Source: Heteronotia binoei (Eukaryota). Taken from it: a stretch of 64,000 nucleotides of DNA. The DNA lies in assembly GCF_032191835.1 (NCBI RefSeq), contig NC_083243.1, positions 164,424,001 through 164,488,000 of the forward strand, given 5' to 3'. Shown one piece after another: positions 33,345-61,816 of the stretch. Each line of letters opens with the position of its first letter. Positions within the stretch are counted from its first letter, which is position 1. Under the pieces are notes generated by a model, which was not told the DNA's origin, did no database searches, and saw only the letters and a list, made by a program, of their open reading frames with translations. Both the position numbers and the translations under genes were made by a program.

Positions 33345-33438
33345 ATGACTGTGAAGCTGCCCTTTCTTCTTTTTGTGACATCTGTGCCCTTGGCTCTTGC
33401 CACAGGGATTAAGCAAAAAAGGACAGCAGCCTTACAAG
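33345..33438 (+). CDS. SIGIRR: Putative first coding (signal-peptide) exon of the SIGIRR/DIGIRR-like gene: MTVKLPFLLFVTSVPLALATGIKQKRTAALQ
   Basis: Acceptor tttgcag| at 33320, ATG in caaaATGa context, donor caag|gtgaga; ends in phase 1, matching both downstream Ig exons; basic n-region, hydrophobic core and an A-L-A cleavage motif. Confidence 0.65.
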
Positions 33439-42736: not shown

Positions 42737-43049
42737 AGTCTTGTATATTTAGTAAATCTATGAGGCAATCTTTCATTTTTCTTTCTATAATACAGATTTA
42801 GAATAGTCTCAGCTAGTTCAGTTCACTTAGAACAGTCTTAAGACCAGCATACAGGTTAATCAGACATAAAATACAAGAGGGATTTGAATCTTCAAAATGT
42901 GATCCTCTTAATTAAAGAATTAATGCACAGAATTTACCAACGCCATGTGATAGATTCAGCTAGGCCTCCTGTGACCAGTGTGAGTGTGGACTGCATGGAG
43001 GATGATTGTGTCCTGCTTGCTGTAGAAGTGTGAACTTGATTGTGAGTGA

Positions 43050-46000
43050 TGGGAGTAGTTGCAATTAAACTGATATGCTTTATCTGTCTGTATCCCATCC
43101 CAATGGGGTCAGGTCAAATTACTTGCCTCCGTCATTGGTGTTATGCAATGCCAGGTCCATTAATAATAAGACCAATCCTTCGGGACTTCCTATGGACTTG
43201 GCTTGTGTGACTGAGACCTGGGTGAGAGATGGGGAGACAGTAGCTCTCTCCCAGGTGGCTCCCCCGGGATACTCAGTCTTTCACCAGTCATGAACTAGCG
43301 GGCGGGGGGGAGGAGTGGCCCTATTCATATGGGAGGCTTACTCCTTCCAGGCCCTCCTGTCTCCAAAGGTCAATGGCATCGAATGTGCTGGTCTGGCATG
43401 GGATGTTGGGGAGGGTTTGGGGGTCTGCCTGGTGTACCAACTGCCTAATGCCCCAGCCAACGCCTTACCGTCCCTGATGGAGGCCGTAACAGGCTGGGCA
43501 TTGGAACACCCAAGGATTTTGGTCTTGGGTGATTTCAGTCCATGCCGATGACGAGGACTCTAGTTAGGCGGCGGAACTGGTGTCATCCATGGCAACACTA
43601 GGACTCTCCCAATTTGTTACAACACCCATGCATCAGACCAGGCACATGCTGGATTTGATCTTTGCGATGGGAATCTTAGTGGACCGGATCACTGAGGAAG
43701 CAATACCGTGGTAGGACCACTACACTCTGAAGGCTTGTATGGATGTGCCACCCCAAACCTGTTTAGTTGGCAAGCATATTTTAGCTCGCCCATGGAACCT
43801 GATGGACTCAGTGCGGTTCTAGATGGCCCTGCAGGACCCCTGGCCCCCCAGCAATTCTCTAGAGGACCTGGTTGAGACCTGGCAAGACCGGCTCACCATG
43901 GCCATCAATGAGATTGCACCATGGTGCCCTCTGCGCCCTCGTTCAAAGCTGGCCCTGTGGTATAACCCAGAGTTGCGGCTGCTGAAACTAAGGCTCAGAC
44001 AGCTAGAGAGGCGGTGGTGGCGTACTCGAGATGAAGCGATCAGAACATCTTATAAAGAGTTTATGAGGTCCTATGAGATGGCAGTCAAAGCCACAAAAAA
44101 AGCTTATTTTGTGGCTAAGACTGCATCTGCGAATTTGCGCCCGGCATAATTATTTAGTATCATTCAGAATCTTACAACTACCCCAAGGCAGACAAAACTG
44201 TAGGGATTTGGATATAGTCTGTGAGGCTTTTGCGACTTTTTTCGCAGATAACATCTCGTCGCTCTGCAATGACTCCCTGCCACTGTTGAAGCAGTAAGGG
44301 AACTCAAAGCTCCGTACCTCTTTTCCAGGTCAGCTCTGGAGGAAGTCGACAGAATTCTCTCTACTGTGCACCCAACAACATGTGACCTGGACCCTTGCAC
44401 ATCCTGGCTGATTAAAGCTTGTTGGTTGGAGCTACGATATCCTATACGGGATATCGTAAATAGATCCCTCTCTGAGGGGCTCTTTCCAGGGCCTCTCAAA
44501 GAGGCAGTGGTCTGCCCTCTCTTGAAAAAACCATCACTAGATCTGGCAGAATTGGCACACTATCGGCCAGTCTCGAATTTGCCCTTTTGGGGCAAAATTA
44601 TTGAGAGGGCAGTAGTGCTACAGTTACAGAGTTTTCTGGAGGACGCTTCCATCCTGGACCCGCATCAGTCCGGTTTTCGCTCAGGTCATGGGGTGGAGAC
44701 AGTACTGGTCGCCCTGGTGGATGATCTCCAGTGGCATCTGGACCGAGGCAGTTCAGGATACTGATGTTGTTGGACCTGTCGGCTGCATTCGACACGGTCG
44801 ACCATCATTTGCTGATTCACCGCCTCGCTGACGCAGGGATTCAGGGGTTGGCCTTATAATGGCTTTCCTCTTTTCTCCATGGTCAGGGACAAAAGGTGGT
44901 GATCGGGGGACAGTCATCCCAGAGGCACTCACTTAACTGTGGAGTGCCTCAGGGGGTGGTGCTCTCCCTAATGCTGTTCAACATCTATATGCGCCCCCTT
45001 GACCAGATTGCCAGGAGGTATGGGTTGGGTTGCCATCAGTACGCTAATAACACCCAGCTCTGTCTACTGATAGACAGTCGGTCTGCCTGTACCCCAGAAA
45101 ATTTGGGTCTGGCGCTGAAGGCCGTGGCAGGGTGGCTTAAGCTGAGTCGACTGAAGCTGAATCTGACAAAGACAGAGGTCCTTTGCCTGAGCCGCAGCAG
45201 CCCGGGAAGGGGAATCCCCCTACAAACTTTTGATGGTGCGCCACTTGCAACAGCACCCAAGGTCAGAAGCTTCGGGGTGCTACTGGAACCTTCATTGATA
45301 ATGGAGGCCACTGCCAAATCCACCTTTTTCCCTCTTAGGCGGGCAAGGCAGTTGGTCCCTTTCCTCGACTGTGGCGACCTAGCAATTGTGACCCACACTA
45401 CGGTTGCCTTGAGATTGGACTACTGTAGTGCCCTCTACATGGGGCCACCCTTGTCTCAAATCCGGAGACTGCAGCTGGTGCAGAATGCAGCGGCTAGGCT
45501 GTTATTGGAGCTTCTCATGCGGGAGGACATACAGTCCGCGCTGCGGGAACTGCACTGGTTGCTGTTAGTGTACCGGATTAGCTACAGGGTGCTGGTTATT
45601 ACCTTTAAAGCCCTATATGTCTTAGGGACCTATATGGCTTAGGGACCATCTCTTCCCATATGTTCCCCAGAGGGTACTCAGATCAGGGACACAGAACCTG
45701 TTATTGATCCCTGGGCCGAGGGAGGCAAGATTGAAGACCAATCGGGAGAGAGCCTTCTCTATAGCGGCCCCCTATTGGTGGAACCAACTTCCGGAAGAAG
45801 TAAGAGCGTTGTGGGACCTTGCCCAGTTCCGCAAGGTTTGCAAGACAGCTTTATTTCAACTTGCTTTTAATTGATAGCTACATGTGAGGATACTCAAGAC
45901 TTAAGTTATTGGAATCTACCATTAGCACCAAATTGTTTTAAAATGTTTTAATTGTTATACTGTTTAAGGTTTTAATTAGTTAATGCTCAGTATTTGTAAA

Positions 46001-46086
46001 TGTTTTTATTGTTGTAAGCCACCCTGAGCCCACTTTGGCGGGGAGGGTGGAATATAAATCCAATTAAACAAATACATAAATAAATT
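43050..46086 (+). mobile_element. Older, degraded, near-complete L2-clade LINE ORF2 (endonuclease + RT), same family as 7214-9255
   Basis: Fragments LCNARSINNKT, LACVTETW, GGGVAL, LVLGDF (APE endonuclease), HYRPVSNLPF, GVPQGVVLS, LQLVQNAAARLL; many stops and frameshifts; 3' end gccaccctgagccc...aatataaat with an A-rich tail. Confidence 0.9.
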
Positions 46087-46110
46087 TATTTCTGACTTAT
46101 TTCTCTTCAG

Positions 46111-46450
46111 CCTTTGATATATCCTGTGTGGACCCAGATCGCTTTTACAGTCACACTCTGTGGATCCAACAACATTTTAGTTAAACATTTGGTTAAAGAT
46201 TTGTTTTGCCTATTGGATAAGCAGAGCCTCCAGCTACTGCAAACTACCTCAGCTTTTAATGTTGATTGGAGCAAAGACTGTCATCCACTTAACCTCAGTG
46301 CTTCAGGATGCCAACACAGCACACTGCACAACAAAACTTCCTATCTCTCCTTTGAGCACATAGAGGCTGAGGATTCAGGCAATTATACCTGCACACTCTA
46401 CTTGAATGAACAGAGAAACGCCTCCTTCACTATTTGGCTGGTCATGGCAG
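46111..46450 (+). CDS. SIGIRR: Extra Ig-like domain exon (IL-1R1 D2-like) of the SIGIRR/DIGIRR-like gene, with an apparent +1 frameshift near 46175-46178
   Basis: Acceptor ttctcttcag|c, donor gcag|gtgagt (phase 1). Ig hallmarks LFC...DWSKDC...LSFEHIEAEDSGNYTC. The phase-1 entry frame reads AFDISCVDPD...QQHFS then TAA at 46182-46184, one base out of frame with the Ig core. Confidence 0.7.
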
Positions 46451-48709: not shown

Positions 48710-48887
48710 ATCTTTGCAGTGTGCTACCCAAATTCCTCTACCCTTCTAATAATGTGACTTTGGAGCACACTTTAGGGAGCCAGTTAACATTGAACTGCAC
48801 TGTGCAGCTGCCCTTTAGCCAGAACTGTGACCTTGCCCTTTACTGGATGAAAGATGACCAGTGGTTAGATGGTAATACCACCCAATG
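48710..48887 (+). CDS. SIGIRR: SIGIRR Ig domain exon, first half: DLCSVLPKFLYPSNNVTLEHTLGSQLTLNCTVQLPFSQNCDLALYWMKDDQWLDGNTTQ(W)
   Basis: Acceptor ttctaacag|a, donor aatg|gtaaga; resembles the SIGIRR / IL-1R1 D3 pattern PxFLxPS...LGSxxxLNCT...WxKD. Confidence 0.92.
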
Positions 48888-50073: not shown

Positions 50074-50204
50074 GTTCAATGACAATGCAACAGAGATATT
50101 TGTCTCCAGCGCTTTGGATGTGAATGTGACTACTGATGAGAATTATGGAGATTTTGCCTGCTTGGTTAGAAACAGCACAGCAGTTTTCACACTGCAAAAA
50201 TCAG
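50074..50204 (+). CDS. SIGIRR: SIGIRR Ig domain exon, second half: WFNDNATEIFVSSALDVNVTTDENYGDFACLVRNSTAVFTLQKS
   Basis: Acceptor catcag|g, donor tcag|gtattg; phase 2 to phase 1; contains the YGxFxC Ig F-strand motif. Confidence 0.92.
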
Positions 50205-53864: not shown

Positions 53865-54030
53865 GGGAGGTGGTGGGCTTTCCTTCTTTGGTGGCTAGAT
53901 GACCATCTGACAGCAATGCTGATTCTGTGAACTTAGGCAAATCATGGGAAGGCAGGAAGGGTTACATCAGTGCTTCGTTCTCAAGGCCCTTTCTTACACA
54001 CCCGGGGAAATGCTGATCTTCACTTGGGGG
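53865..54030 (+). mobile_element. 3'-UTR-like fragment of a different CR1-type element, directly abutting the long CR1
   Basis: gggaggtggtgggctttccttc...gctagatgaccatctgacagcaatgctgattctgtg resembles squamate CR1 3' ends. Confidence 0.5.
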
Positions 54031-57000
54031 ATGTATTTGATGAGCCCCACTCTGAACGTGGCAGCCCCTTTGCTGCCAGGGAGCATGAGGGTCGAGAGGG
54101 AACAGGGCACCGTGCTGAGGATAAGGAGAATGCGCCCTCAGAAGGGACCTCTTCTTCAGTTGGTGAGCGGGTATCCTTTTGCACCAAGGAACCATCCCTG
54201 GGCAGGGAGAGATGGGGGGGTCTTGGTAGTTGGTGATTCAATCCTTAGGCAAGTAGACAGCTGGGTGGAAAAAAACGTACTGACCGAATGGTGACTTGCC
54301 TGCCTGATGCAAAGGTAGCAGACATTACACATGTAGTAGATAGGCTGATAGACAGTGCTGGGGAGGAGCCAGGGGTCGTGGTGCATGTTGGCACCAACGA
54401 TGTGGGGAAATGCAGTCGTGAGGTCCTGGAGGAAAAATTTAGGCTGCTAGGCGGGAGACTTAAGGCCAGGACCTCCAAGGTAGCCTTCTCAGAAGTGCTA
54501 CCTGTTCCACGTGCAGGGCTGGAGAGACAGGCACAAATTAGAAGTCTCAATGTGTGGATGAGACGATGGTGTAGGGAGGAAGGATTTAATTTTGTTAGGC
54601 ACTGGGATGCTGTCTGGAACAAGCGGGAGCTGTACAAAAGAGACGGTCTCCACTTGTCCCCAGATGGAACCAAGCTACTGGCACTTAAAATCAAAAAGAT
54701 GGCAGAGCAGTTCTTAAACTAAATCTTGGGGGAAAGCCGACAGGAGATGAAATGAATCTGGTTCGGGAGGACTCATCTCAAAGAGATGAAGGGTTACCTG
54801 TTACTTTTCTACTGAGTATTGGATGAGAGTTGTCCACTGAGATGGTGACAAACAGTATGGAATGTCTGCCAAAGTCTCGAGGCAGCAGGAGGAAGGTTGC
54901 GGGCCTAACTTGCCTGGGAAAGTATAGATGTTTGTATACAAATGCTAAAAGTGTTCGAAGTAAAATTGGTGAGTTGGAATGTTTAGTGTTGGGGGAAAAC
55001 ATAGACATTGTGGGAATTTCAAAAACTTGGTGGAATGAGGAGAATCAGTGGGATGCGGTGACTCCGGGATATAAGTTATATCGGAAGGATAGGGAGGGAA
55101 GGGTTGGAGGTGGGGTGGCTCTGTATGTCAGAGAGGGTATACAGTCCAGTAAGACTGAGGTCAAAGAATTAGATTTCCTTCTAGAAATGCTTTGGGTCAA
55201 AATAGAGGGCCCAAAAGGAAATTTAACTATGGGAGTTATCGCCCACCAAATCAAAAGATAGAGGACGATTATAATATGATGGAAGGATTAAAGATAGCTG
55301 CTAAATGTAAAAACTGTGTCGTAATAGCTAATTTTAATTACCCACAGATTGATTGGGTCAATATGTGTTCAGGTCGAGAGAAAGAGATTGAGTTTCTAGG
55401 TGCTCTCAATGACTGTGCTATGGAGCAGATGGTCACAGAACCTACCAGGGGTGGGGCGATCCTGGATTTGGTCCTAAGTAATGCCCAAGACTTGGTGAGA
55501 GATGTAAAAGTGATCGCACCACTTGGGAGCAGTGACCATAACATTATTGATTTCACCATTTGTATAAATAGGGAGTTGCCCCAAAAGACCAGCACAACCA
55601 TGTTTAACTTTAAAAGGGGTAAATTCTCTGAAATGAGAAGGTATGTGAAGAGGAAACTGAAAGGAAAGGTAAATACAGTCAAAACCCTTGGGGAAGCTTG
55701 GAGGCTATTTAAAACTACAATCCTAGAAGCTCAGATAAAATATATACCACAAGTTAGGAAAGGCACAAACAGGTATAAGAAAAGGCCTGCATGGTTAACA
55801 AACAAAGTAATGGAAGCTGTAAAAGGTAAGAAGGATTCCTTTAAGTGGTGGAAAGCTAGTCCGTCAGATTAATAAAAGGGAACACAGGCTGTGGCAAATC
55901 AAATGCAAGACTGTGATCAGGCAGGCAAAAAGGGACTATGAGGAGCATATTGCAAAAAGCATAAAGACCAACAATAAAAATTCCTTCAAATATATTAGAA
56001 GCAGGAAACCAGACAGGGAGGCAGTGAGGCCCTTGGATGACCAAGGGGTAAAAGGATTACTGAAGGGGGATAGGGAAATGGCTGAGAAGCTGAATGCATT
56101 TTTTGCCTCCATCTTCACTGTGGAAGACGAGAAGTGTTTGCCTGCTCCAGAACCACTTATATTGGAAGGGGAGTTGAAAGACCTGAGTCAGATTGAGGTG
56201 ACAAGAGAGGAGGTCCTACAACTGATAGACAAATTAAAAACTAATAAGTCACTAGGTCCGGATGGCATACATCCAAGAGTTCTGAAAGAACTCAAAGTTG
56301 AACTTGTGGATCTTCTGACAAAAATATGTAATCTTTCATTGAAATCTGCCTCTGTTCCTGAGGACTGGAAGGTAGCAAACGTCACCCCCATCTTTAAAAA
56401 GGGTTCCAGAGGAGATCCGGGAAACTACAGGCCAGTCAGTCTGACTTCAATACTGGGAAAGTTGGTAGAAACCATTATCAAGGACAGAATGAGTAGGCAC
56501 ATTGATGAACACGAGTTATTGAGGAAGACTCAGCTTGGGTTTTGTAAGGGAAGATCTTGCCTCACTAACCTCTTACAGTTCTTTGAGGGGGTGAACAAAC
56601 ATATGGACAAAGGGGACCCGATAGATATTGTTTACCTTGACTTCCAGAAAGCTTTTGATAAAGTTCCTCAACAAAGGCTCCTTAGTAAGCTCAAGAGTCA
56701 TGGAGTAAAAGGAGGGGGCCTCTTGTGGATCAAAAACTGGCTAATTAACAGGAAGCAGAGAGTGAGTATAAATGGACAGTCTTCACAGCGGAGGACGGTA
56801 AGCAGTGGGGTGCCGCAGGGCTCAGTACTGGGTCCCATGCTCTTTAATTCATTCATAAATGATTTGGAGTTGAGAGTAAGCAGTGAAGTGGCCAGGTTTG
56901 CAGATGACACTAAATTGTTCAGGGTTGTGAGAACCAGAGCGGATTGTGAGGCACTCCAAAGGGATATGTTGAGGCTGGGTGAGTGGGCATCAACGTGGCA

Positions 57001-57845
57001 GATGAGGTTCAATGTGGCCAAGTGCAAAGTAATGTACATTGAGGCCAAGAATCCCAGCTACAAATACAAGTTGATGTGATGTGAACTGGCAGAGACTGAC
57101 CAAGATAGAGGTCTTGGGGTCGTGGTAAATAACTCACTGAAAATGTCAAGACAGTGTGTGATTGCAATAAAAAAGGCCACCGCCATGCTGGGAATTATTA
57201 GAAAGGGAATTGAAAACAAATCAGCCAATATCATAATGCTCCTGTATAAATCGATGGTGCAGTCTCATTTGGAATACTGTGTACAATTCTGGTCACCGTA
57301 CCTCAAAAAGGATATTATAGCATTGGAAAAAGTGCAGAAAAGGGCAACTACAATGATTAAAGGTTTGTAACACTTTCCCTATGAAGAAAGGTTAAAACGC
57401 TTGGGGCTCTTTAGCTTGGAGAAATGTCGACTGCGGGGTGACATGATCGAGGTTTACAAGATTATGCATCGGATGGAGAAAGTAGAGAAAGAAGTCCTTT
57501 TCTCCCTTTCTCACAATACAAGAACTCGTGGGCATTCGATGGAATTGCTGAGCAGTCAGGTTAAAACGGATAAAAGGAAGTACTTCTTCACCCAAAGAGT
57601 GATTAACATATGGAATTCACTGCCATAGGAGGTGATGGTGGCTACTAGCTTAGCCAGCTTTAAGAGGGGATTGGATAAAAATATGGAGCAGAGGCCCATC
57701 AGTGGCTATTAACCACAGTATATATATATATGTGTGTGTGTGTGTGTATGCACACATACATATATATTGGCCACTGTGTGACACAGAGTGTTGGACTGGA
57801 TGGGCCATTGTCCTGATCCAACATGGCTTCTCTTATGTTCTTATA
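54020..57845 (+). mobile_element. CR1 LINE, 5'-truncated: ORF1 (SGNH/GDSL esterase domain) plus disrupted ORF2 (endonuclease + RT)
   Basis: VVGDSILR...VVHVGTNDVG (ORF1); CLYTNAKS, NYRPVSLTS, YLDFQKAFDKV, GVPQGSVLGP, FADDTKL (ORF2); CR1 3' end ...cctgatccaacatggcttctcttatgttcttat; several frameshifts. Confidence 0.93.
57719..57767. repeat. (TA)n(TG)n microsatellite inside the CR1 3' UTR
   Basis: Direct reading. Confidence 0.9.
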
Positions 57846-58318: not shown

Positions 58319-58506
58319 GTTATTGTTATATTATTTGTTGCATTTGTCTTTTAGAGACCGCACAATCCTGCTGAGCATCCAGCAACAACTGTATAGATTT
58401 ATAGGACAATGCTTATGAGCACAGCTCTTCTCTTCCTTTCTCACTTCCAATGTATTGTGTAATTGACTGTCATGACTATTGAGAGAAGTGTTCTTGCCTT
58501 TTACAG

Positions 58507-58650
58507 CAGAGGCTGCTGGGCACTTGGGTGCTGTGCTAGCTGCATTCATCATCCTGACATTATTGATACTAATGAGCGTGACATATGTGAAGTGTCGTCT
58601 GAATGTGCTGCTGTGGTACAGGAACCGTTATGGCGATCTGGAGATTAATG
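58507..58650 (+). CDS. SIGIRR: SIGIRR transmembrane exon: AEAAGHLGAVLAAFIILTLLILMSVTYVKCRLNVLLWYRNRYGDLEIN
   Basis: Acceptor ccttttacag|c, donor aatg|gtaatc; hydrophobic helix followed by the SIGIRR-diagnostic YVKCRLNVLLWY. Confidence 0.95.
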
Positions 58651-58806: not shown

Positions 58807-59320
58807 GTTGTTTTATGCTGTGGGAAGTGGTTGAGGGGATTTGCATGATGAAATCTTGGCACTGTCGGCAAAGTGGTCTATGATAGCATCTCACAAAGGA
58901 AAATTGTATGATGGTAGAACTAAAGTGAAATTACTGTCTTCCTGCCTTAACTGAACATCCAAGCATTCAGTATCAGCGAGGGGGAAGGCTCCCCCCCCCC
59001 TTTTTGTGGTGCTTATGGCAATGTAGCAGTGCAAACTTAAATAGCTACACCCTTGTAAATCCATTGATTTTGGTTAACTTAGAAGGATGCAACTTCGCTT
59101 AGGATTGTGCTGTAGCTTTTGCCGAGCTTGTCATTCACTTGCATGGGATTTACCTCCGAGGAGAGTCCAAGATAAAATTGCAGAGTCAGTCTTGCCCTAG
59201 CTGGGAAATTCTACAGGAGATACACTCTCAGTGTTATGGTTGGTCTGCACTGGAAAGAAATAATGATCTCATGACATGAACTGTATTTCCACTTTTCTCC
59301 TCTCTGTACTTTTCCCACAG

Positions 59321-59464
59321 ATGGCAAGCTCTATGATGCCTATGTGTCTTACGCTAACTCAACAGATGACAGAAAATTTGTGAACTTCATAATGAAACCA
59401 CAGCTGGAAAATCGTTATGGTTACAAACTCTTCCTAGATGATAAAGATATCCTTCCCAACTCAG
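59321..59464 (+). CDS. SIGIRR: SIGIRR TIR exon (box 1): [48 protein letters not shown]
   Basis: Acceptor tttcccacag|a, donor tcag|gtagag; [14 protein letters not shown] box 1 and GYKLFLDD motif. Confidence 0.96.
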
Positions 59465-59812
59465 GTAGAGAACTGGTCCAACACCCTCTTTAGTGTTTAC
59501 CTGTTGCAAACAACTTTGCTATTGAACTCTACAGATAGGAATTGATTAGTTAACTGAGCACCTTGATACCACTAGTTTAACTCAAATGGGATTGTTTATG
59601 TTGGTTTACTTGTAATGGGGTAATTCAACATTGAGGGACAAACTAGGCAAGCCCCCATGAAATGCATGATGAGATCCCCTGTGGCTAATGGAGGTTTTAC
59701 AGCACAAAGCAGCAGAAGGGACAGCAGTGGCAATCATATTAAGATTAGGAATGTGGTACAGCAGGAAGTGCTGCTTGTTGCAGTTGGCCCATGGGATGGA
59801 GCATATTAACAC

Positions 59813-60195
59813 TGGAGCTAGTTTGGTATAGTGGTTAAGTGCGCCGACTCTAATCTGGGAGAACTGGGTTTGATTCCCCACTCCTCCACCTGCACCTGCT
59901 GGTATGACCTCGGGCCAATCATAACTCTCTCAGAGCTATTCCTCTCAAAAGCAGTCCTTGAAGAGCTTTCTCAGCCCCACCTATCTCATATGGTGTCTGT
60001 TGTGGGGAGGGGAAGGGAAAGGAGATTGTAAGATGCACTCAGAGCTATTCCTCTCAAAAGCAGTCCTTGAAGAGCTTTCTCAGCCCCACCTACCTCATAT
60101 GGTGTCTGTTGTGGGGAGGGGAAGGGAAAGGAGATTGTAAGATGCACTGATACTTTGAGTGAAGGGCAGGGTATAACTCCAATCTCCTCTTCTTG
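59813..60195 (+). mobile_element. tRNA-derived SINE (Squam3-like) with an internal 109-bp tandem duplication
   Basis: Head tagtggttaag...gggtttgattcccc; the unit starting at 59929 is repeated from 60038. Confidence 0.85.
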
Positions 60196-61200
60196 ATGTA
60201 TATAGTTTTTCTATATGGAGAACTATCAGCTGGGGAGGGCTCTAAATCAGGAAAGTGGTGCAGAGAGAGTATAAAGCTCCTTTGTCCCATTGCCATGATT
60301 TTGATCTGATTCCCTCTCCTAATCACATATAGTTGCTGTTAGCTGCTTTTTTTTTGTGAGAGTCTGCTCATTGATTTCCCATTTATCATCTAGTTAGATC
60401 CTAGCCATGTATACTTGGACTATTCTGTGGACTGGTTGGTCTATCTAATTTTTTTTCTTTAATATTTTCCCCCCGGAAGTATTCAGGGCTTGTGTATGCA
60501 GTAGAACTCAAATAGCTGTAGACATAGCAAATTGCCCCTACACTCAGTGTGCCCCCATTCACATTCTTATGTACTCTTACTTTGGAATGTATGCATCCAA
60601 CAGACAACACACACACACACAAATCCTGCACTACCCTGATGATAGGAGGAGTGGGAGGGAGGAAGCACATGCAGGGAGGAGCTGGGACCGTACTTATGGA
60701 GGGTGCTACTCATTCAAGAAAATGGCAGCTGTAATGCAAAAAGAGTATTCTCCAAGTACTTTATCCCCTTTCTGAAGATGCACTTTGAAAAGGGTCAAAC
60801 CTGATACGCCATTTATCAGATAGCAGCTGAGAAAAAGTACATTTGAGCTGTGATTGCTATGCCAAGAAACACAGTTCATCTTATAAACAAAACCTCATCT
60901 TTTGACTGTGCTCTGAAGAATAAAATGAAGATGCGCCTAATGTTTGGTTTCTTCCTGAAACCACTGGCACCCATTTTATCCAAAGCAAATAGTGTCATTT
61001 GAAGGAACATTAAACACTATAGAGAATTGGGTGGCATTGAGGAATTGACTCCTTTCTTCAGGGCATCTGTTTGGAACTGATGCAATTTTTGTTGTTAGGA
61101 TGATTCTTTCCAGTACAGAAGGTGGGTGAGAGCTGAAGTAGTGGTAGGCTAACATTGGGCCTTTACCGAAAAGAGATTCAACTTTCTGTCTTTTCCCCAG

Positions 61201-61303
61201 AGCCTTCTGCAGATCTGATAATGAATGTCAGCCGGTGTCGTCGCCTCATTGTCGTTCTTTCTAATGCTTACCTGGAACAGGAATGGTGCAACAGTAATTT
61301 CAG
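61201..61303 (+). CDS. SIGIRR: SIGIRR TIR exon: [34 protein letters not shown](R)
   Basis: Acceptor ttttccccag|a, donor tcag|gtaaga; EPSADL...[11 protein letters not shown] is a SIGIRR signature. Confidence 0.96.
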
Positions 61304-61665
61304 GTAAGAGAGACAATTGGTTGCTGTTTTGTTGAATCTTCTTGGGCAGCTTTCATTATAGTGGCAGGGTCTTGTCAGCTAAACTAGTGCAGTTGATATC
61401 CACAGTGTCAAAAAATTCATAGATGTCTGGAAGTGAAGTATAGAAGTCATGAGTTTTTAATCTCTTAAACCTTCTGACGTTCAACCAAATGGGTTGAATG
61501 CCATTACAATTAGTGAAACATTTGAATGAATTCTTGAGGTGCCTGGATCATATGCAAAGCCTCTCCTGCAGTTTGGTTGGATGCTGAGGAGTTCCACTAC
61601 TGCCTGAGTGAAGTAAATTTTCCTATAACTCTTTAAACTACTAGTTTTTCTTTTTTCATTTCCAG

Positions 61666-61816
61666 GGAAGGTCTGTGGAGACTGTTGGAACTGTCTCAGA
61701 GGCCAATCTTTGTTGCCTTCGAGAGCCAGTACCGGGAAATAGCACATCCAGCCATTGATTTGCTGAAGCAGCACAAGAACACGGTGACTCTGCTGATATG
61801 GTGTGCTGGTTCCATG
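61666..61816 (+). CDS. SIGIRR: SIGIRR TIR exon: [51 protein letters not shown]; the remaining exons lie beyond the window
   Basis: Acceptor tttcatttccag|g, donor catg|gtaaat; phase 2 to phase 0; REGLxRLLEL..RPIF..FE..HPA..LL.QH motif. Confidence 0.95.

What the first reader, a model, noticed from the sequence alone, without database searches (positions are those of the whole stretch)
46111..46197. +1 frameshift from an imperfect 13-nt duplication at the start of the extra Ig exon
Seen in sequence: entering from the phase-1 leader gives A-F-D-I-S-C-V-D-P-D-R-F-Y-S-H-T-L-W-I-Q-Q-H-F-S then TAA (46182-46184). The Ig core is one base off this frame. The shift coincides with cattttagttaaa (46173-46185, 13 nt) followed by catttggttaaa (46186-46197, 12 nt). 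Removing one T from the T4 run at 46175-46178 gives a fully open ...QQHLVKHLVKDLFC... frame, whose first Cys could pair with the WSKDC Cys as in IL-1R1 D2. Inference: either a real recent inactivating mutation or a homopolymer sequencing error. The rest of the exon has no stops, so any real lesion is young. Skipping the exon joins the leader (phase 1) to 48710 (phase 1) in frame, giving a single-Ig SIGIRR. If real, this captures a DIGIRR-to-SIGIRR transition.
Basis: partly seen in the sequence, partly recalled or inferred. Interest (0 to 1): 0.75.

Follow-up and report, generated by a model that had tools for sequence, protein, structure and literature searches.

The report
Frameshifted extra Ig exon, gecko SIGIRR
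In the Bynoe's gecko genome, the exon for the second (outer) antibody-like domain of the immune brake SIGIRR carries 13 extra bases that break its reading frame, so this gecko appears to be losing a domain that turtles, birds and mammals also lack; sequencing reads have not yet confirmed the one extra base that matters.

Summary
The window is Heteronotia binoei (identical to GCA_032191835.1 chromosome CM063345.1). Entered in phase 1 from the leader exon, exon 46111-46450 reads a conserved N-terminal block, then hits TAA at 46182-84. The Ig core lies one base off this frame.

I first suspected that a downstream in-frame acceptor explained this. Orthologues rejected that idea. Paroedura, Sphaerodactylus, Eublepharis, two other squamates, gharial and sturgeon DIGIRR all read both blocks in one frame.

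DNA alignment shows H. binoei alone has 13 extra nucleotides, seen as a period-12 tandem array plus one base. It also alone has a 3-kb LINE inserted about 26 nt upstream of the acceptor and a roughly 10-nt deletion in the pyrimidine tract.

RefSeq lists only 408-410 aa single-Ig proteins for this species. They start at the conserved ATG (46444) in the last codons of the broken exon. Turtle and bird SIGIRR use the same start. Paroedura picta, in the same family, keeps a 546-aa two-Ig isoform.

Substitution counts show no extra decay, so the lesion is either young or a one-base assembly error. I put this at about 75% real. Turtles carry different lesions in the same exon.

This is a new, young example of a known kind of domain loss. 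Two earlier scan notes on this same window agree; none concerns other DNA.

The parts
33345..33438 (+). Leader (signal-peptide) exon, 31 codons plus 1 base, ends in phase 1, donor gt at 33439-40
   Evidence: It matches the N-termini of the Paroedura, Sphaerodactylus and Eublepharis two-Ig proteins by tblastn and by eye.
43084..46084 (+). LINE insertion of about 3.0 kb, specific to H. binoei, with decayed RT ORFs; it ends about 26 nt upstream of the Ig-exon acceptor; flanking TTTAT on both sides
   Evidence: Pfam RVT_1 hits. In Paroedura, Sphaerodactylus and Eublepharis the flanks 42950-43083 and 46085 onward are contiguous.
46090..46110 (+). Branch-point-like TTCTGAC, a shortened pyrimidine tract and the acceptor AG (46109-10); about 10 nt are deleted relative to other geckos
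   Evidence: Alignment A3. Pyrimidine count 17/20, the best of all AGs nearby.
46111..46450 (+). Extra (membrane-distal) Ig exon, 340 nt, orthologous to the first Ig of sturgeon DIGIRR and of the squamate and gharial two-Ig SIGIRR
46111..46184 (+). Conserved N-terminal block read in the leader's frame, ending at the premature TAA (46182-84)
   Evidence: The block is conserved in all orthologues.
46171..46203 (+). Period-12 tandem array (2.7 copies) holding the 13 extra nt; copies at 46173-85 and 46186-97; T4 run at 46175-78
   Evidence: There is a 13-nt gap in all other species.
46186..46449 (+). Ig core in the +1 frame, 88 codons with no stop, carrying the LFC, KDC and YTC cysteines
46444..46446 (+). 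Conserved Met codon (ATGGCAG|gt), used as the start codon of RefSeq H. binoei SIGIRR X1 and X2
   Evidence: The CDS range of P0210 starts at L006:10001, which is window 46444. The same 7-nt exon end occurs in turtle, ostrich and other geckos.
48710..48887 (+). First half of the retained Ig domain (phase 1 to 2)
50074..50204 (+). Second half of the retained Ig domain (phase 2 to 1)
58506..58650 (+). Transmembrane exon
59320..61816 (+). First three TIR-domain exons (about 59320-59464, 61198-61304, 61663-61816); the gene continues beyond the window
   Evidence: Boundaries come from BLAST and are approximate.

Best explanation
The window holds the 5' two-thirds of SIGIRR of Heteronotia binoei. In squamates, crocodilians and sturgeons this gene encodes a leader peptide and two Ig domains, the layout called DIGIRR in fish. 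In the H. binoei lineage the exon for the outer Ig domain gained 13 nt. A 12-nt unit already nearly repeated in the ancestor (Paroedura has about 1.7 copies) was duplicated, most likely by replication slippage, and one further base was added in or next to the T run. Translation from the leader ATG therefore stops after 55 codons, and the two-Ig isoform is lost. The gene itself survives. The last 7 nt of the broken exon (ATG GCA G) hold a Met codon conserved from sturgeon to gecko. From this Met the single-Ig, transmembrane and TIR protein is read without a signal peptide, as in turtle and bird SIGIRR. Shown: the insertion, its lineage specificity, the frame break, the conserved Met and its use in public gene models. 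Inferred: that the extra base is real, that slippage was the mechanism, and that the Met-initiated protein is what the animal makes (through an alternative 5' end, leaky scanning or reinitiation).
For: The window is identical to the H. binoei assembly over 27.5 kb, and its exons are identical to XP_060118167.1. The HMMER search of 1.8 billion proteins with the exon found specific relatives that read the two frames as one; the full-length one is sturgeon DIGIRR. Two-Ig proteins of 511-561 aa are annotated in gharial and in squamates including three other geckos. H. binoei alone has 13 extra nt, a LINE next to the branch point and a shortened pyrimidine tract. The H. binoei RefSeq products are 410 and 408 aa, and both start at 46444. 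Paroedura and Python also have annotated isoforms starting at that Met. The start codon of ostrich and sea-turtle SIGIRR is the same ATGGNAG|gt exon end. Turtles carry other lesions in the same exon: a 4-nt deletion in emydid mRNA, and two stops plus deletions in Chelonia. Mammalian SIGIRR lacks a signal peptide (PMC9448908).
Against: The frame break depends on a single base. With T3 instead of T4 the exon would be open, with a 4-residue insertion in the low-confidence stretch between the first two strands of the predicted fold, which could be tolerated. No reads, second assembly or same-species transcripts could be reached. On the H. binoei branch the exon shows 10 nonsynonymous and 6 synonymous changes, against 8 and 8 in Paroedura, so there is no signature of long neutral decay. 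The leader exon and both splice sites are intact. How the Met-start mRNA arises is unknown, and three upstream out-of-frame ATGs lie in the exon.
Confidence: 0.75

Rival explanations
1. Assembly error: the 12-nt duplication is real, but the extra base is a consensus indel error, so H. binoei has an intact two-Ig SIGIRR with an in-frame 4-residue insertion (HLVK).
For: The rest of the exon is open and shows no H. binoei-specific acceleration. The leader, acceptor and donor are intact. The insertion falls in the low-confidence stretch (residues 20-23, pLDDT below 50) between the first two strands of the predicted Ig fold.
Against: A 4-base run is not a typical site for a homopolymer error. The repeat copies also differ by a substitution at the adjacent base. 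The same lineage shows other structural damage around the exon, namely a LINE 26 nt from the acceptor and a pyrimidine-tract deletion, and replacements at residues invariant elsewhere, such as Pro to Leu in FCPLD. RefSeq gives no two-Ig or 'low quality' corrected model. The sequencing technology of the assembly was not verified here.
Confidence: 0.15
2. The frame is rescued by splicing: a downstream AG (46149-50, 46179-80 or 46197-98) is used as acceptor. Each gives a phase 1-1 exon of 300, 270 or 252 nt that is in frame with the Ig core, so a shortened two-Ig protein is still made.
For: All three AGs give stop-free reading from a phase-1 entry. The 46151 start even supplies a Cys (TLC) upstream of LFC.
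Against: All orthologues use the AG homologous to 46109-10 and encode the conserved SCVDPDRFY block, which these acceptors would delete. Their pyrimidine tracts are poor (10-12 of 20 against 17 of 20). A product of about 510-540 aa would be the longest isoform, yet the longest RefSeq product is 410 aa.
Confidence: 0.04
3. Exon skipping: the leader is spliced directly to 48710, giving a single-Ig SIGIRR that keeps a cleavable signal peptide.
For: Both junctions are phase 1, so the join is in frame. The LINE insertion and the shortened branch-point-to-AG distance could weaken inclusion of the exon.
Against: Such a product (about 439 aa) would be longer than the annotated 410 aa, yet it is not on record. 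The annotated CDS starts inside the supposedly skipped exon. Turtle mRNAs keep the broken exon.
Confidence: 0.06

Closest known systems
DIGIRR of teleosts and sturgeons (Gu et al. 2011, cited in PMC3705552; Acipenser sinensis UAB59905.1)
   Same: Leader peptide, two Ig domains, TM and TIR. The H. binoei extra exon aligns to the first Ig of the sturgeon protein at 48% identity, with all four Cys and the GNYTCTLYL motif.
   Different: In H. binoei the first Ig cannot be read through. The name DIGIRR has, to my knowledge, been applied only to fish; the squamate and gharial two-Ig proteins are labelled 'single Ig IL-1-related receptor' in RefSeq.
Two-Ig 'SIGIRR' of other squamates and gharial (e.g. 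Paroedura picta XP_077177365.1, Eublepharis XP_054827658.1, Gavialis)
   Same: Orthologous gene with the same exon structure, and 78-83% protein identity in the extra Ig core to Eublepharis and Sphaerodactylus.
   Different: Those are intact. H. binoei has the 13-nt insertion, the LINE and the pyrimidine-tract deletion.
Single-Ig SIGIRR (IL-1R8/TIR8) of birds, turtles and mammals
   Same: The product predicted for H. binoei starts at the positionally identical Met (ATGGNAG|gt) and has one Ig, TM and TIR, with no signal peptide (PMC9448908).
   Different: Birds have no trace of the extra exon: in ostrich, tblastn found no relic in the 6 kb upstream of the start, including the 3.4-kb spacer from ANO9. 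H. binoei still has a nearly intact exon and leader. No mammalian sequence was compared here.
Turtle SIGIRR 5' region
   Same: The extra Ig exon is present but disabled. It is still spliced into mRNA, and the protein starts at the terminal Met.
   Different: The lesions differ: a 4-nt deletion in an emydid, and two stops plus 18- and 6-nt deletions in Chelonia. None is shared with H. binoei.

Membership tests
SIGIRR (IL-1R8) orthologue | One Ig, TM and TIR architecture, with sequence identity to annotated SIGIRR | tested here: met
   Window exons match XP_060118167.1 at 92-100% by tblastn; the mismatches lie where alignments run past exon ends, and the exon translations read identical to the protein. 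Genomic identity to the H. binoei assembly is complete. The orthologous turtle mRNA ORF carries Pfam TIR.
SIGIRR (IL-1R8) orthologue | Conserved neighbourhood (ANO9 upstream, PKP3-like Arm-repeat gene downstream on the opposite strand) | tested here: inconclusive
   An Arm-repeat gene lies downstream on the minus strand in H. binoei L006 and in ostrich L011, and an anoctamin lies upstream in ostrich. The upstream part of the window was not examined.
DIGIRR-type two-Ig receptor | N-terminal signal-peptide exon | tested here: met
   Leader exon 33345-33438 is intact and homologous to the leaders of two-Ig orthologues. Signal-peptide cleavage was not predicted with a dedicated tool.
DIGIRR-type two-Ig receptor | A membrane-distal Ig domain orthologous to DIGIRR Ig1 | tested here: met
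   Pfam Ig_2 and I-set at the gathering threshold. Ig fold of the orthologue model, pLDDT 75.
DIGIRR-type two-Ig receptor | Both Ig domains readable in one open reading frame from the leader | tested here: not met
   TAA at 46182-84 in the leader's frame, with the Ig core in the +1 frame. There are 13 extra nt compared with all orthologues.
Lineage-specific exon pseudogenisation (real mutation) | The lesion is absent from close relatives | tested here: met
   It is absent in Paroedura (same family), Sphaerodactylus, Eublepharis and two other squamates.
Lineage-specific exon pseudogenisation (real mutation) | The lesion is confirmed in raw reads or a second individual | not testable with these tools
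   No reads, alternate haplotype or same-species transcripts were reachable. The word search with the exon found nothing.
Lineage-specific exon pseudogenisation (real mutation) | Relaxed constraint (dN/dS rising towards 1) on the affected branch | tested here: inconclusive
   10 nonsynonymous and 6 synonymous changes on the H. binoei branch against 8 and 8 on the Paroedura branch. The numbers are too small to separate them, and the exon evolves fast in both lineages.

The most novel reading that the evidence does not exclude
The conserved ATG-GCA-G at the very end of the extra Ig exon acts as a latent start codon. This has let amniote lineages repeatedly turn a secreted-leader, two-Ig DIGIRR-type receptor into the signal-peptide-less single-Ig SIGIRR simply by breaking the upstream exon. 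Birds, at least two turtle lineages with different lesions, and Heteronotia (the youngest case) would each have done so. Squamates with an intact exon may already make both forms from alternative 5' ends. If so, H. binoei and Paroedura picta form a natural pair for asking what the outer Ig domain does.
Probability: 0.45. Interest if true: 0.55.

Novelty: new member of a known kind. Interest (0 to 1): 0.35.

Why it matters
SIGIRR/IL-1R8 is a much-studied brake on IL-1 and Toll-like receptor signalling. Its single Ig domain and missing signal peptide have been explained by descent from a fish DIGIRR-like ancestor. The data here show that the two-Ig form persists in crocodilians and most squamates, though it is hidden under the name 'single Ig'. 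The outer domain has been disabled several times by different lesions. Every single-Ig sauropsid form examined starts at the same conserved Met codon of the lost exon. H. binoei would be the freshest such loss, with an intact two-Ig relative in the same family. That makes the function of the outer domain experimentally approachable. For this one gecko the finding is modest: one isoform is lost and the gene is kept, and the public annotation already lists only single-Ig products.

Tried and rejected
1. Alternative-acceptor hypothesis. I initially favoured it because the core frame is open from 46111 and three downstream AGs give phase 1-1 exons. I rejected it once orthologues showed that the block upstream of the break is conserved coding sequence.

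2. Unseen intervening exon or phase-0 entry. Rejected, because annotated orthologues join leader and Ig exon directly.

3. The word-index protein search with the exon found nothing. The full HMMER search was needed.

4. The PDB sequence search and the Foldseek search of an orthologue model gave only generic I-set Ig matches, with IL-1R-family chains (IL1RAPL1, IL-36R, IL-18R alpha) scattered among them. They could not assign the domain to D1 or D2.

5. Testing for relaxed selection by parsimony counts was uninformative.

6. Literature on the H. binoei assembly method was not found, so the prior for an indel error rests on general knowledge.

7. Same-species transcripts or reads were not found in any reachable collection.

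8. Programmed +1 ribosomal frameshifting at TTT-AGT-TAA was considered. There is no supporting evidence and I put it below 2%.

The spliced coding sequence was never joined for a search. Exons were searched one at a time by reference, and the joined step was left out. No contig that I took for human was fetched, saved or compared.

Full report
**What is in the sequence**

- A strong acceptor (pyrimidines 17 of 20, AG at 46109-10) opens an exon that runs to a consensus donor at 46450|gtgagt.
- In the frame set by a phase-1 entry, the exon encodes A-F-D-I-S-C-V-D-P-D-R-F-Y-S-H-T-L-W-I-Q-Q-H-F-S and then TAA at 46182-84.
- The frame that starts at 46111 is open through all 113 codons and contains a typical Ig core ending in GNYTC. 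Pfam places it at the gathering threshold for Ig_2 and I-set.
- The exon is 340 nt, one more than a multiple of three.
- The two repeat copies (46173-85 and 46186-97) are present. Tandem Repeats Finder reports a period-12 array of 2.7 copies at 46171-46203.
- The leader exon 33345-33438 encodes a hydrophobic 31-residue N-terminus and ends in phase 1.

**A rival I raised and then rejected**

The core frame is open from the first base of the exon. Three downstream AGs (46149-50, 46179-80, 46197-98) would each give a phase 1-1 exon in frame with the core. I therefore first thought the frameshift might come from choosing the wrong acceptor. Related sequences settled the matter.

**Relatives**

The word-index search with the exon found nothing, so I ran the full HMMER search. 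Apart from generic multi-Ig proteins it returned four specific hits:
- two short ORFs from unspliced genomic contigs of other squamates (loci L001-L003);
- a 547-aa sturgeon protein whose cluster includes 'DIGIRR [Acipenser sinensis]';
- a 128-aa ORF from turtle mRNA contigs (L004 and L005).

All of them read the SCVDPDRFY block and the LFC...KDC...YTC core in one frame.

A search with the turtle main ORF then listed named SIGIRR proteins.
- Two-Ig forms of 511-561 aa are annotated in gharial and in many squamates (Anolis, Sceloporus, Pogona, Lacerta, Varanus, Elgaria, Hemicordylus, Rhineura, Python), and in the geckos Eublepharis, Sphaerodactylus, Euleptes and Paroedura.
- Birds and turtles have only forms of about 410-420 aa.

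**Which genome this is**

The window's exons match Heteronotia binoei XP_060118167.1. The locus fetched for that protein is identical to the window over the whole 27.5-kb overlap, with no mismatches (GCA_032191835.1, CM063345.1). H. binoei has only two annotated products, of 410 and 408 aa. Both begin MADLCSV. The recorded CDS range starts at window 46444, which is the ATG in the last seven bases of the broken exon. Paroedura picta belongs to the same family and subfamily. It has a 546-aa isoform X1 with the leader joined directly to an intact extra Ig exon. This excludes an unseen intervening exon.

**The lesion**

I aligned the exon DNA of H. binoei with Paroedura, Sphaerodactylus, Eublepharis, two other squamates and the turtle mRNA. 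H. binoei alone has 13 additional nucleotides, exactly at the repeat. Paroedura reads CAA GAC TTG GTT AAT CAT TTG TTT TGC at this spot. That sequence already holds about 1.7 copies of a 12-nt near-repeat. The simplest history is a slippage duplication of one 12-nt unit, which is in frame and adds four residues, plus one extra base in the first copy. The two copies differ by TTTTA against TTTG. The extra base can therefore be read as a T added to a T3 run next to a G-to-A change, or as G replaced by TA. Only that single base breaks the frame.

**Other changes private to H. binoei**

- A roughly 3.0-kb LINE with decayed reverse-transcriptase ORFs occupies 43084-46084. In the three other geckos the flanks are contiguous.
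- The LINE sits immediately 5' of a conserved branch-point-like motif (TTCTAAC in the others, TTCTGAC here).
- About 10 nt between that motif and the AG are deleted.
- Several replacements hit residues that are invariant or nearly so in 18 other sequences, sturgeon included: Pro to Leu in FCPLD, His to Asp, Leu to Gln, and a new unpaired Cys.

**Is it old, young or an artefact?**

I assigned changes by parsimony with Sphaerodactylus and Eublepharis as outgroups.
- In the extra exon, the H. binoei branch has 10 nonsynonymous and 6 synonymous changes. The Paroedura branch has 8 and 8.
- In the remaining 407 residues the two species have 9 and 10 private replacements.
- The exon therefore evolves several times faster than the rest of the protein in both geckos, with no added decay in H. 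binoei.
- Together with the absence of further stops, this means the lesion is either recent or not real.

If the run were T3, the four-residue insertion would fall in the low-confidence stretch between the first two strands of the predicted fold (pLDDT 75), where it could be tolerated.

I could not reach reads, an alternate haplotype or same-species transcripts, and found no paper on how the assembly was made. Several points favour a real lesion:
- A 4-base run is an unlikely site for a consensus indel error.
- There is neighbouring structural damage.
- Several conserved residues are replaced.
- There is no two-Ig or corrected gene model.

I put a real frameshift at about 0.75 and an assembly error at about 0.15.

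**How the gene probably works now**

The leader ATG opens a 55-codon ORF that ends 266 nt before the next exon junction, so such mRNAs should be unproductive and prone to nonsense-mediated decay (inference). The annotated proteins use the Met codon at 46444.
- That codon, in the form ATGGCAG|gt, ends the extra Ig exon in every gecko examined.
- The annotated start codon of green sea turtle (ATGGAAG|gt) and ostrich (ATGGCAG|gt) SIGIRR has the same form.
- Paroedura and Python also have annotated isoforms that start there. The single-Ig, leaderless protein may therefore be a normal second product in squamates (inference).
- Three out-of-frame ATGs lie upstream within the exon. This favours an alternative 5' end over leaky scanning, but it was not tested.
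However, it would give a product longer than any on record, and the recorded CDS begins inside the exon.

**Parallel cases**

- Emydid turtle mRNA contigs from two sequencing runs keep the leader and the extra Ig exon but carry a 4-nt deletion in it. Their main ORF is 97% identical to Terrapene SIGIRR.
- The Chelonia mydas genome has the exon directly upstream of its annotated ATG, with two in-frame stops and two deletions, none shared with the emydid.
- In ostrich, tblastn found no relic in the 6 kb upstream of the start, which includes the 3.4-kb spacer from ANO9.
- Gharial is intact.

The outer Ig domain has therefore been lost more than once in sauropsids. H. binoei is the least decayed instance seen here. 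Mammalian SIGIRR is reported to lack a signal peptide (PMC9448908). No mammalian or human sequence was compared.

**Comparison with what is known**

Fish DIGIRR was proposed as an intermediate between three-Ig IL-1 receptors and SIGIRR (Gu et al. 2011, as summarised in PMC3705552). A 2025 survey describes SIGIRR-like proteins as having one Ig domain or none (PMC12108812). I found no paper noting the two-Ig form in reptiles, although the RefSeq models exist. The H. binoei locus fails one defining feature of a DIGIRR-type receptor, a single ORF through both Ig domains. It meets all tested features of a SIGIRR orthologue.

**Verdict**

It is unproven on real versus error, and probably wrong on the exon-skipping route. 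This is a new, young member of a known kind of event, lineage-specific loss of a domain-encoding exon. It is of moderate interest, mainly as part of the recurrent pattern and as a natural contrast with Paroedura.

Exons were searched one at a time by reference, and the spliced sequence was never joined for a search. The only read-through of the break used X at the break.

Noticed in passing
window 43084-46084: A roughly 3-kb LINE (RVT_1 fragments, + strand) has inserted in the H. binoei lineage only. It lies 26 nt upstream of the extra-Ig exon acceptor and directly 5' of the conserved branch-point-like motif, with TTTAT on both flanks. A deletion of about 10 nt shortens the distance from that motif to the AG to about 15 nt.
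   Followed up: partly
window 53944-57630: A second LINE with better preserved endonuclease (Exo_endo_phos_2) and reverse-transcriptase (RVT_1, E 2e-35) ORFs lies on the + strand, in the intron between the retained Ig domain and the TM exon.
   Followed up: partly
L004:266-1944 and L005 (emydid turtle mRNA contigs, Logan SRR27880523/27): Turtle SIGIRR mRNA still carries an intact leader and the extra Ig exon, with a 4-nt deletion. This gives a 128-codon upstream ORF ahead of the 417-aa main ORF, which starts at the conserved Met.
   Followed up: partly
L010:5695-6003 (Chelonia mydas): A relic of the extra Ig exon sits directly upstream of the annotated SIGIRR start codon. It has two in-frame stops and 18-nt and 6-nt deletions, which differ from the emydid lesion. 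The exon therefore decayed separately, or after a shared earlier cause, in the two turtle lineages.
   Followed up: partly
L011:5950-6010 (Struthio camelus): The ostrich SIGIRR start codon lies in the same 7-nt exon end (ATGGCAG|gt, phase 1) that terminates the extra Ig exon in squamates and turtles. tblastn found no other trace of that exon in the 6 kb upstream of the start, which includes the 3.4-kb spacer after ANO9.
   Followed up: partly
window 33408-33425 (end of leader exon): The residues after the hydrophobic core of the H. binoei leader (GIKQKR) differ at four of six positions from the GSELER/GSEQER of other geckos. This may be another sign of relaxed constraint on the two-Ig isoform.
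   Followed up: no
The annotated protein includes FNDNATEIFVSS, which is encoded from 50074.
   Followed up: yes
protein search tools: The word-index search with the 113-aa exon missed P0006 and P0008, although both are in the allowed length range, share several words of 5 to 10 residues with the query, and are in the collection. The full HMMER search found them.
   Followed up: no
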